Below, in pieces: positions 56,280 through 56,306 of a DNA stretch of 64,000 bases. The translations under genes and the position numbers were made by a program. Every line of letters starts with the position of its first letter. Positions within the stretch are counted from its first letter, which is position 1. Source of the stretch: Ranitomeya imitator (lineage: Eukaryota); the NCBI RefSeq assembly GCF_032444005.1, contig NC_091284.1:608592001-608656000 (forward strand), in the 5' to 3' direction. The notes beneath the pieces are model-generated. The model saw only the letters and a list, made by a program, of their open reading frames with translations. It did no database searches and was not told the DNA's origin.

Positions 56280-56306
56280 GAAATAATAAACCAAATGGAA
56301 ATTTAG
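56280..56306 (+). CDS. MYCBP2: Candidate 27-nt alternative microexon of MYCBP2 encoding (G)NNKPNGNL(G)
   Basis: Long T-rich tract ending ttttttag, 27 nt open in phase 1/1 matching the flanking exons, donor TTAG|GTATGG. No transcript evidence available. Confidence 0.6.
   Translation, partial: EIINQMEI

What the first reader, a model, noticed from the sequence alone, without database searches (positions are those of the whole stretch)
56280..56306. Candidate 27-nt frame-preserving microexon in MYCBP2
Seen: a long U-rich tract, AG, 27 nt open in exactly the phase (1/1) needed between exons 56004-56105 and 60680-60799, then a GTATGG donor. It would add (G)NNKPNGNL to the linker inside the RCC1-like region. 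I do not recall this peptide in the canonical human protein. Established: neural microexons are typically 3-27 nt and frame-preserving, and MYCBP2 is a neuronal regulator. Tissue-specific inclusion is inferred.
Basis: partly seen in the sequence, partly recalled or inferred. Interest (0 to 1): 0.7.

Follow-up and report, generated by a model that had tools for sequence, protein, structure and literature searches.

The report
Real frog MYCBP2 27-nt microexon
The 27-base candidate is a real, alternatively spliced coding microexon of the frog MYCBP2 gene, but public gene models of many other frogs already carry it, so it is a correct call, not a discovery.

Summary
At 56278-56312 the sequence reads AG | 27 nt | GTATGG, behind a U-rich tract. 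It is open in phase 1 and adds G-NNKPNGNL after the exon 56004-56105.

The pattern alone is not beyond chance. The same 4.6-kb intron holds 145 in-frame, open AG..GT candidates of 3-51 nt. Two independent lines show this one is real:
- Spliced contigs from two public runs (two studies, two organism labels) join 56306|GT to AG|60701.
- The same exon sits at the same site in 88 of 115 public frog MYCBP2 models, from Ascaphus to Xenopus, ranids and hyloids. The peptide is identical (NNKPNGNL) in many hyloids, including Dendrobates, one of the three closest models found.

None of 263 non-frog models carries it, so it looks restricted to frogs.

- In this lineage the downstream exon starts at 60701, not 60680.
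- That downstream exon is itself an alternative cassette.
- A second donor at 56330 gives a 51-nt form, which is annotated in four other frogs.

Neural-specific inclusion was not testable here.

The parts
56280..56306 (+). 27-nt coding microexon of MYCBP2 (phase 1 to 1). It adds G-NNKPNGNL between ..RRHRIDEGR and the next exon.
   Evidence: Sequence and frame. Contig joint 56306|GT..AG|60701 in runs X1 and X2. Identical peptide at the same site in hyloid frog models, variants in other frogs. tblastn of Dendrobates P0330 onto 56279-56332.
56235..56279 (+). 3' splice region: an AG-free zone with a U-rich polypyrimidine tract ending in UUCUUUUUUAG. It holds UGC at 56245 (-35), UCUU motifs, and yUnAy branch-point candidates at -25, -20 and -15. 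A further UGC lies just upstream at 56231 (-49).
   Evidence: Motif scan and tract score. The role of the UGC and UCUU motifs is inferred from the SRRM3/4-PTBP model reviewed in PMC10551640.
56307..56312 (+). 5' splice site of the 27-nt form (UAG|GUAUGG)
   Evidence: Joint with GT..AG ends at cut +3 in two runs. PWM score 6.85 bits.
56307..56330 (+). Optional 24-nt extension (G-MAIFLKT) ending at a second donor, CUG|GUAAUA at 56331. It would give a 51-nt exon.
   Evidence: Open in frame. The homologous extension is annotated in Ascaphus (GMATVLKT, P0405), Pelodytes (GMTTVLKP, P0270), Dendrobates (GMTILLRT, P0330) and Leptodactylus (GMAVILRH, P0334). tblastn. Its use in this species was not seen among the rows shown.
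56004..56105 (+). Upstream MYCBP2 exon (..AVPVAGVNIDEHLQLRQDDKRQRVNRRHRIDEGR), ending in phase 1
   Evidence: 100% tblastn match to the Dendrobates and Ranitomeya proteins. A 2385-nt spliced contig of X1 ends exactly at 56105, as expected at a splice branch.
60701..60799 (+). Downstream cassette exon as actually joined to the microexon (G-PVYPNFLNHREQALARLRALPAQLKHKRDKKK). It is itself alternatively spliced across jawed vertebrates.
   Evidence: Joint to 60701. Dendrobates P0330 residues 884-916 match 60700-60798 at 97%. Models with and without this exon exist in frogs, salamanders, amniotes, coelacanth, gar and sturgeon.
60680..60700 (+). They encode PFVFPV, like the ancestral exon start PFVFPG of other frogs. 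In this lineage they lie upstream of the acceptor actually used, and a local CCTGTA repeat created the new AG at 60699-60700.
   Evidence: Sequence. Comparison with other frogs' GPFVFPGPNF against the dendrobatid GPVFPNF. Use of 60680 as a minor acceptor is not excluded.

Best explanation
Positions 56280-56306 are a genuine, alternatively spliced coding microexon of the E3 ubiquitin ligase gene MYCBP2 (PAM/Phr1/Highwire/RPM-1 family). The window comes from a hyloid, dendrobatid-like frog.

The exon is defined by a strong U-rich 3' splice region and a good GUAUGG donor. When included, it inserts nine residues (G-NNKPNGNL). The insert falls in a long, poorly ordered insertion of the RCC1-like propeller, right after the basic stretch KRQRVNRRHRIDEGR and before a second optional cassette (60701-60799).

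The exon is orthologous to one annotated across Anura and not seen outside frogs. In other frogs it is combined freely with the downstream cassette: both, either or neither. It also has a second donor 24 nt further on, which gives a 51-nt form.

Shown: the exon exists, its donor is used, its frame and peptide are conserved, and it is alternative in other frogs.

Inferred: it changes the length or surface of a flexible linker instead of a folded core, and its inclusion is set by the usual microexon machinery (SRRM3/4 on upstream UGC against PTBP on U/C-rich tracts), possibly enriched in neurons.
For: - Literal sequence and frame.
- a contig joint from 56303 to 60698, with GT..AG ends at cut +3, meaning 56306|60701. 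It is seen in X1 (depth 41.3) and X2 (depth 5.6), from two studies and two organism labels. The short side is 23 letters plus 4 ambiguous, which equals the whole 27-nt exon. Depth in the bin 56234-56400 is fully explained by that 23-nt piece, so there is no intron read-through there.
- The upstream spliced contig (2385 nt, depth 59.6) stops exactly at 56105, as at a splice branch.
- Gene identity: a window exon hits the 4673-aa MYCBP2 P0008 at 91%. Window exons are 94-100% identical to dendrobatid MYCBP2. RCC1/RLD Pfam families flank the site.
- Orthologous annotated microexon at the same junction: NNKPNGNL in Engystomops, Eleutherodactylus, Mixophyes, Hyla, Dendropsophus, Rhinoderma, Pseudophryne, Dendrobates and Leptodactylus. 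NNKPNGNI in Bufo and Hyperolius. NNNRPNGNI in Aquarana and Lithobates. GNKPNGDL, GKKPNGDL and GKNPNGDL in Xenopus. IKKANGNL in Pelodytes. KKIPNGNL in Ascaphus.
- Tally: 88 of 115 frog models and 0 of 263 non-frog models.
- A region-restricted search gives a clean score gap: 65-81 bits for frogs with the 27-nt exon and 55 bits for the one Pelodytes model with the extended form. Every model without it, frog or non-frog, scores 43 bits or less.
- Frog models show all four combinations with the downstream cassette.
Against: - The acceptor junction 56105 to 56280 is not among the joints displayed. 13 rows were hidden, and the tool masked 56237-56280 as a repeat. Acceptor use therefore rests on the orthologous models and on the absence of intron depth.
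- The joint has a short side of 23 letters, below the tool's 30-letter comfort limit. That is unavoidable for a microexon.
- The runs are contigs of guessed RNA type, so inclusion level and tissue cannot be read.
- Most of the frog models are automatic predictions, not cloned cDNAs.
- The structure model is poor (mean pLDDT 44.7), so 'disordered linker' is only weakly supported.
- The nearest UGC is 35 nt upstream and the pyrimidine tract is strong, not weak. That fits the typical SRRM4 target only partly.
Confidence: 0.92

Rival explanations
1. The exon is real but not neural-specific. It is included broadly, as near-default, in most tissues, and skipping is the minor event.
For: - 88 of 115 frog models include it.
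- In run X1 the contig carrying microexon plus downstream exon has depth 41.3, against 59.6 for the upstream exon contig. That hints at majority inclusion in a sample of unknown tissue.
- The 3' splice region is strong (85% pyrimidine), unlike the weak tracts typical of SRRM4-dependent microexons (PMC10551640).
Against: - Contig depths are not a measure of inclusion, as the tool's own caveat says.
- Counts of models reflect enumeration by annotation pipelines, not usage.
- MYCBP2 has SRRM4-dependent splicing events in mouse brain (PMC4387716).
- UGC and UCUU motifs are present upstream.
Confidence: 0.4
2. The main product in this species uses the downstream donor at 56330 (51-nt exon, G-NNKPNGNL-G-MAIFLKT), and the 27-nt form is minor.
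For: - The 51-nt reading is open.
- Its second donor scores 5.5 bits.
- The homologous extension is annotated in Ascaphus, Pelodytes, Dendrobates and Leptodactylus, and is conserved at the peptide level.
Against: - The only joint seen in both runs leaves from 56306, not 56330.
- Only 4 of 88 frog models with the microexon use the long form.
Confidence: 0.07
3. A chance AG..GT decoy in the intron that is not spliced, with the contig joint being an assembly or alignment artefact.
For: - 145 comparable in-frame candidates exist in the same intron.
- The joint's short side is only 23 letters.
Against: - The same joint, with canonical GT..AG ends, appears in two runs from two studies.
- A 23-letter exact match is not expected by chance in 5 kb.
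- The identical peptide sits at the identical exon junction in many independently annotated frog genomes.
Confidence: 0.01

Closest known systems
Annotated MYCBP2 microexon of other frogs, for example Dendrobates tinctorius isoform X10 (P0330), Mixophyes fleayi X14 (P0331), Xenopus tropicalis X1-X3 (P0243-P0245) and Ascaphus truei X9 (P0275)
   Same: Same gene, same junction after ..RRHRIDEGR, same phase and the same 27-nt length. The peptide is identical (NNKPNGNL in hyloids) or closely related. The optional 24-nt extension and the optional downstream cassette are also the same.
   Different: Nothing of substance. Ranids have 30 nt (NNNRPNGNI). In this lineage, as in Dendrobates, the acceptor of the downstream exon has moved 21 nt.
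Neural, SRRM3/SRRM4-dependent microexons of vertebrates (3-27 nt, frame-preserving), as reviewed in PMC10551640. Mouse Mycbp2 is listed among genes with nSR100-dependent events (PMC4387716).
   Same: Length 27 nt, frame preservation, a neuronal signalling host gene, upstream UGC and U/C-rich PTBP-like motifs, and a position next to a folded domain in a region of low predicted order.
   Different: Neural inclusion and SRRM dependence are untested. The pyrimidine tract is strong, not weak. The nearest UGC is 35 nt away. Conservation stops at frogs, whereas the classic set is conserved across vertebrates.
The vertebrate-wide alternative cassette of MYCBP2 immediately downstream (GPLVFPGPIFMNHREQALARIRPHPAQLKHKRDKHK in amniotes; 60701-60799 here)
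   Same: Same linker of the RCC1-like domain, same phase, also optional and also in frame.
   Different: It is 99-108 nt, not a microexon. It is old: present in gar, sturgeon, carp-like teleosts, coelacanth, lungfish, salamanders and amniotes. The 27-nt exon was seen only in frogs.

Membership tests
Orthologue of the annotated anuran MYCBP2 microexon | Lies in MYCBP2, in the intron after the exon ending ..RRHRIDEGR, phase 1 | tested here: met
   window exons are 94-100% identical to dendrobatid MYCBP2, and the site is the same as in the frog models.
Orthologue of the annotated anuran MYCBP2 microexon | Encodes the G-x3-(P/A)-N-G-(N/D)-(L/I) peptide in 27 nt | tested here: met
   NNKPNGNL is identical to 21 hyloid models. 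tblastn of P0330 maps to 56279-56332.
Orthologue of the annotated anuran MYCBP2 microexon | Spliced into mRNA in this species | tested here: met
   The donor joint 56306|60701 is seen in two runs. The acceptor joint was not among the rows shown, so that half is inferred.
Neural SRRM3/4-dependent microexon class | 3-27 nt and frame-preserving | tested here: met
   27 nt, open in phase 1.
Neural SRRM3/4-dependent microexon class | UGC motif close upstream of the 3' splice site, within a weak, G-interrupted pyrimidine tract with PTBP sites | tested here: inconclusive
   UGC at -35 and -49, and UCUU at -40 and -10. But the tract next to the AG is strong, at 85% pyrimidine. Criteria are taken from PMC10551640.
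Neural SRRM3/4-dependent microexon class | Inclusion restricted to or strongly enriched in neurons, and dependent on SRRM3/4 | not testable with these tools
No paper found reports this exon.
Neural SRRM3/4-dependent microexon class | Deep conservation across vertebrates | tested here: not met
   0 of 263 non-frog MYCBP2 models carry it. It is conserved within Anura only.

The most novel reading that the evidence does not exclude
The exon is a frog-only addition to MYCBP2, present since the common ancestor of Ascaphus and all other living frogs. It has two conserved alternative donors (27 and 51 nt) and is under neuron-specific SRRM3/4 control. That would make it a lineage-specific recruit to the neural microexon programme in a key axon and synapse regulator. 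No paper found in the searches run here describes it.
Probability: 0.35. Interest if true: 0.4.

Novelty: already known. Interest (0 to 1): 0.2.

Why it matters
The result shows that a first-pass reading of raw sequence picked a true microexon out of about 145 look-alikes in one intron, which is useful as a calibration point.

Biologically, the stretch of MYCBP2 between two blades of its RCC1-like domain turns out to be a cluster of small in-frame splice choices: 6, 15, 27/51 and about 100 nt. One of them, this microexon, looks restricted to frogs.

If its inclusion proves to be neuronal, Xenopus would offer an easy system to ask what a lineage-specific microexon does in a conserved regulator of axon growth and degeneration. 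As it stands, the exon is already in public gene models, so nothing new is claimed.

Tried and rejected
- PDB sequence searches with the two flanking exons found nothing, so there is no solved structure for this linker.
- Fetching orthologous frog genomic DNA failed because the gene range is too long (Bufo bufo, 145 kb). Conservation of the intron flanks could therefore not be examined, and conservation was judged at the peptide level only.
- Supplementary tables of PMC4387716 are not held, so the position of the mouse nSR100-dependent Mycbp2 events is unknown.
- Literature searches for MYCBP2 with microexon, SRRM4 or alternative splicing gave no paper on this exon.
- The earlier-findings index had nothing on this place.
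- Rfam found no RNA family in 55000-61500, and no competing ORF of note overlaps the site on either strand.
- The AlphaFold model of the domain fragment was poor (mean pLDDT 44.7) and is used only as a weak hint.
Searches used single exons by reference or public protein ids. The joined reading frame was checked only inside a local script.
- N stretches were left untouched.

Full report
**Observation.** The window reads ...UUAUUCUUUUUUAG | GAAATAATAAACCAAATGGAAATTTAG | GUAUGGCG... with the 27 nt at 56280-56306. The upstream exon 56004-56105 translates in one frame as VPVAGVNIDEHLQLRQDDKRQRVNRRHRIDEGR and ends with one base of a codon. In that phase the 27 nt read G-NNKPNGNL and hand the same phase on. 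The literal description is correct.

**Is it more than chance?** On sequence alone it is not. The intron 56106-60679 (4574 nt, 40% G+C) holds 145 AG..GT segments of 3-51 nt that keep this frame open, five of them 27 nt long. The candidate does rank first on a simple score. Its tract is 85% pyrimidine over -23..-4. Its donor scores 6.85 bits, against 3.7 and 6.1 for the two flanking real exons. The nearest upstream AG is 46 nt away. That is suggestive but not decisive.

**RNA evidence.** I laid four of them, from four studies.
- Two of them, X1 (organism A) and X2 (organism B), each have a contig that skips from 56303 to 60698 with 4 ambiguous letters (TAGG on both sides). GT..AG ends appear at cut +3, so the joint is 56306|GT...AG|60701.
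- The short side is 23 letters. With the 4 ambiguous ones this is the whole 27-nt exon.
- Depth in the bin 56234-56400 (5.68 in X1, 0.77 in X2) equals 23 nt times the contig depth (41.3 and 5.61) divided by the 167-nt bin. Nothing else lies there, which means no intron read-through.
- A 2385-nt contig of X1 (depth 59.6) ends exactly at 56105, as assembly graphs do at a splice branch.
- Exon depth far above intron depth shows that these runs are RNA.

The caveats are these. The runs are contigs, so level, tissue and rare forms cannot be read. The joint's short side is below 30 letters. The tool masked 56237-56280 as a repeat. The joint 56105>56280 is not among the rows shown. The donor is therefore shown directly, and the acceptor only indirectly.

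**Gene and orthologues.** A neighbouring exon (54305-54640, searched by reference) hit a 4673-aa MYCBP2 at 91% identity. In that python protein the residues after ..RRHRLEEGR run straight into DGSGDRSEKDA...

Three region-restricted searches with public MYCBP2 proteins and one cluster listing brought in 378 models that cover the site. Frog models carry a nine-residue insert at exactly this junction:

| Peptide | Frogs |
|---|---|
| NNKPNGNL | Engystomops, Eleutherodactylus, Mixophyes, Hyla, Dendropsophus, Rhinoderma, Pseudophryne, Dendrobates, Leptodactylus |
| NNKPNGNI | Bufo, Hyperolius |
| NNNRPNGNI | Aquarana, Lithobates |
| GNKPNGDL, GKKPNGDL, GKNPNGDL | Xenopus |
| IKKANGNL | Pelodytes |
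| KKIPNGNL | Ascaphus |

The tally is 88 of 115 frog models with the insert and 0 of 263 non-frog models. The non-frog set covers mammals, birds, squamates, turtles, three salamanders, lungfish, coelacanth, gar, sturgeon, paddlefish and teleosts.

A search scored only on 42 residues around the site gives a clean break. Frogs with the 27-nt exon score 65-81 bits, and the one Pelodytes model with the extended form scores 55 bits. Every model without the exon scores 43 bits or less.

The exon is therefore conserved across Anura, including Ascaphus, and was not found outside frogs. That absence rests on gene models, not on intron sequence, which I could not fetch.

**Which frog.** Window exons are 94-100% identical to MYCBP2 of Ranitomeya, Dendrobates and Phyllobates, and less so to other hyloids. 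This points to a dendrobatid-like species. Dendrobates isoform X10 maps onto 56279-56332 and then onto 60700-60798.

**Corrections and additions.**
1. *Downstream exon start.* In the RNA contigs and in Dendrobates the downstream exon starts at 60701 (G-PVYPNFL..), not at 60680. The 21 nt 60680-60700 encode PFVFPV, like the ancestral start PFVFPG of other frogs. A local CCTGTA repeat has created a new AG at 60699-60700. Minor use of 60680 is not excluded.
2. *The downstream exon is optional.* It is an old, optional cassette. Models with and without it exist from gar to mammals. Frog models show all four combinations with the microexon: 74 both, 10 microexon only, 15 cassette only, 12 neither.
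3. *A second donor.* CUG|GUAAUA after 56330 would add G-MAIFLKT, giving 51 nt in all. The homologous extension is annotated in Ascaphus (MATVLKT), Pelodytes (MTTVLKP), Dendrobates (MTILLRT) and Leptodactylus (MAVILRH). Either this long form is real and old, or these 24 nt are conserved as a splicing element. In this species only the 27-nt donor was seen.

**How it probably works.** Shown: a 27-nt exon with a strong U tract and a good donor is spliced in, keeps the frame, and is optional in frogs.

Its place in the protein is between blades of the RCC1-like domain. Pfam RLD and RCC1 repeats lie on both sides. A fragment model gives pLDDT 60-87 for the blades and 20-37 for the roughly 230-residue insertion that holds the site. 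The model as a whole is poor (mean 44.7), so this is only a hint.

Inferred: the nine residues lengthen a flexible, basic linker between KRQRVNRRHR and the KHKRDKKK of the next cassette. They change a surface or a spacing, not a fold.

The regulation is also inferred. UGC lies at -35 and -49 and UCUU at -40 and -10. This fits, but only partly, the SRRM3/4-versus-PTBP model, in which targets usually have weak tracts (PMC10551640). Mouse Mycbp2 has nSR100-dependent events (PMC4387716), but their position is not available. Neural specificity stays untested. A broadly included exon is a serious rival.

**Other checks.** There is no Rfam family and no competing ORF at the site on either strand. No solved structure covers the flanking exons. 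No paper was found on this exon, and the scan's notes hold nothing on this place.

The joined frame was read only in a local script.

**Verdict.** The exon is already present in public gene models of many frogs, including close relatives, so it is not new. What may be unpublished is that it appears restricted to frogs and has two conserved donors.

Noticed in passing
window 60680-60799: The exon after the microexon is itself an optional in-frame cassette, found from gar and sturgeon to mammals. In this lineage its acceptor has shifted 21 nt downstream to 60701, next to a small CCTGTA duplication that created a new AG.
   Followed up: partly
window 54840-54855: Tandem 5' splice sites 6 nt apart (CUAG|GUAAAG|GUGUGA) give ..PLDLLL with or without GK. 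Both forms are annotated in Xenopus, Ascaphus, ranids and Dendrobates.
   Followed up: partly
window 56004-56019: An internal AG (GGCAG|G at 56018/56019) matches an alternative acceptor that drops AVPVP. It is annotated in gar, coelacanth, lungfish and some clupeid fish models. Two loach models (P0327, P0329) skip this whole exon.
   Followed up: no
window 56900-57400, 57900-58240, 58740-59240: Three intronic stretches reach contig depths of thousands in all four runs and show many variant letters. This looks like high-copy interspersed repeats that are transcribed or abundant in the data.
   Followed up: no
window 1210-2202, 5399-8899, 47060-48160: Long open frames in introns resemble transposon proteins: a Tc1/mariner-like transposase, and reverse-transcriptase or integrase-like frames. 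Judged by eye from the translations only.
   Followed up: no
P0196-P0201, P0159/P0193, P0169, P0325 (bird and snake models): A few amniote models carry unrelated inserts at the same junction, for example DFIESCCCSAQK or DTNGRFSCLTFV. These are probably annotation artefacts or species-specific cryptic exons. None resembles the frog peptide.
   Followed up: no
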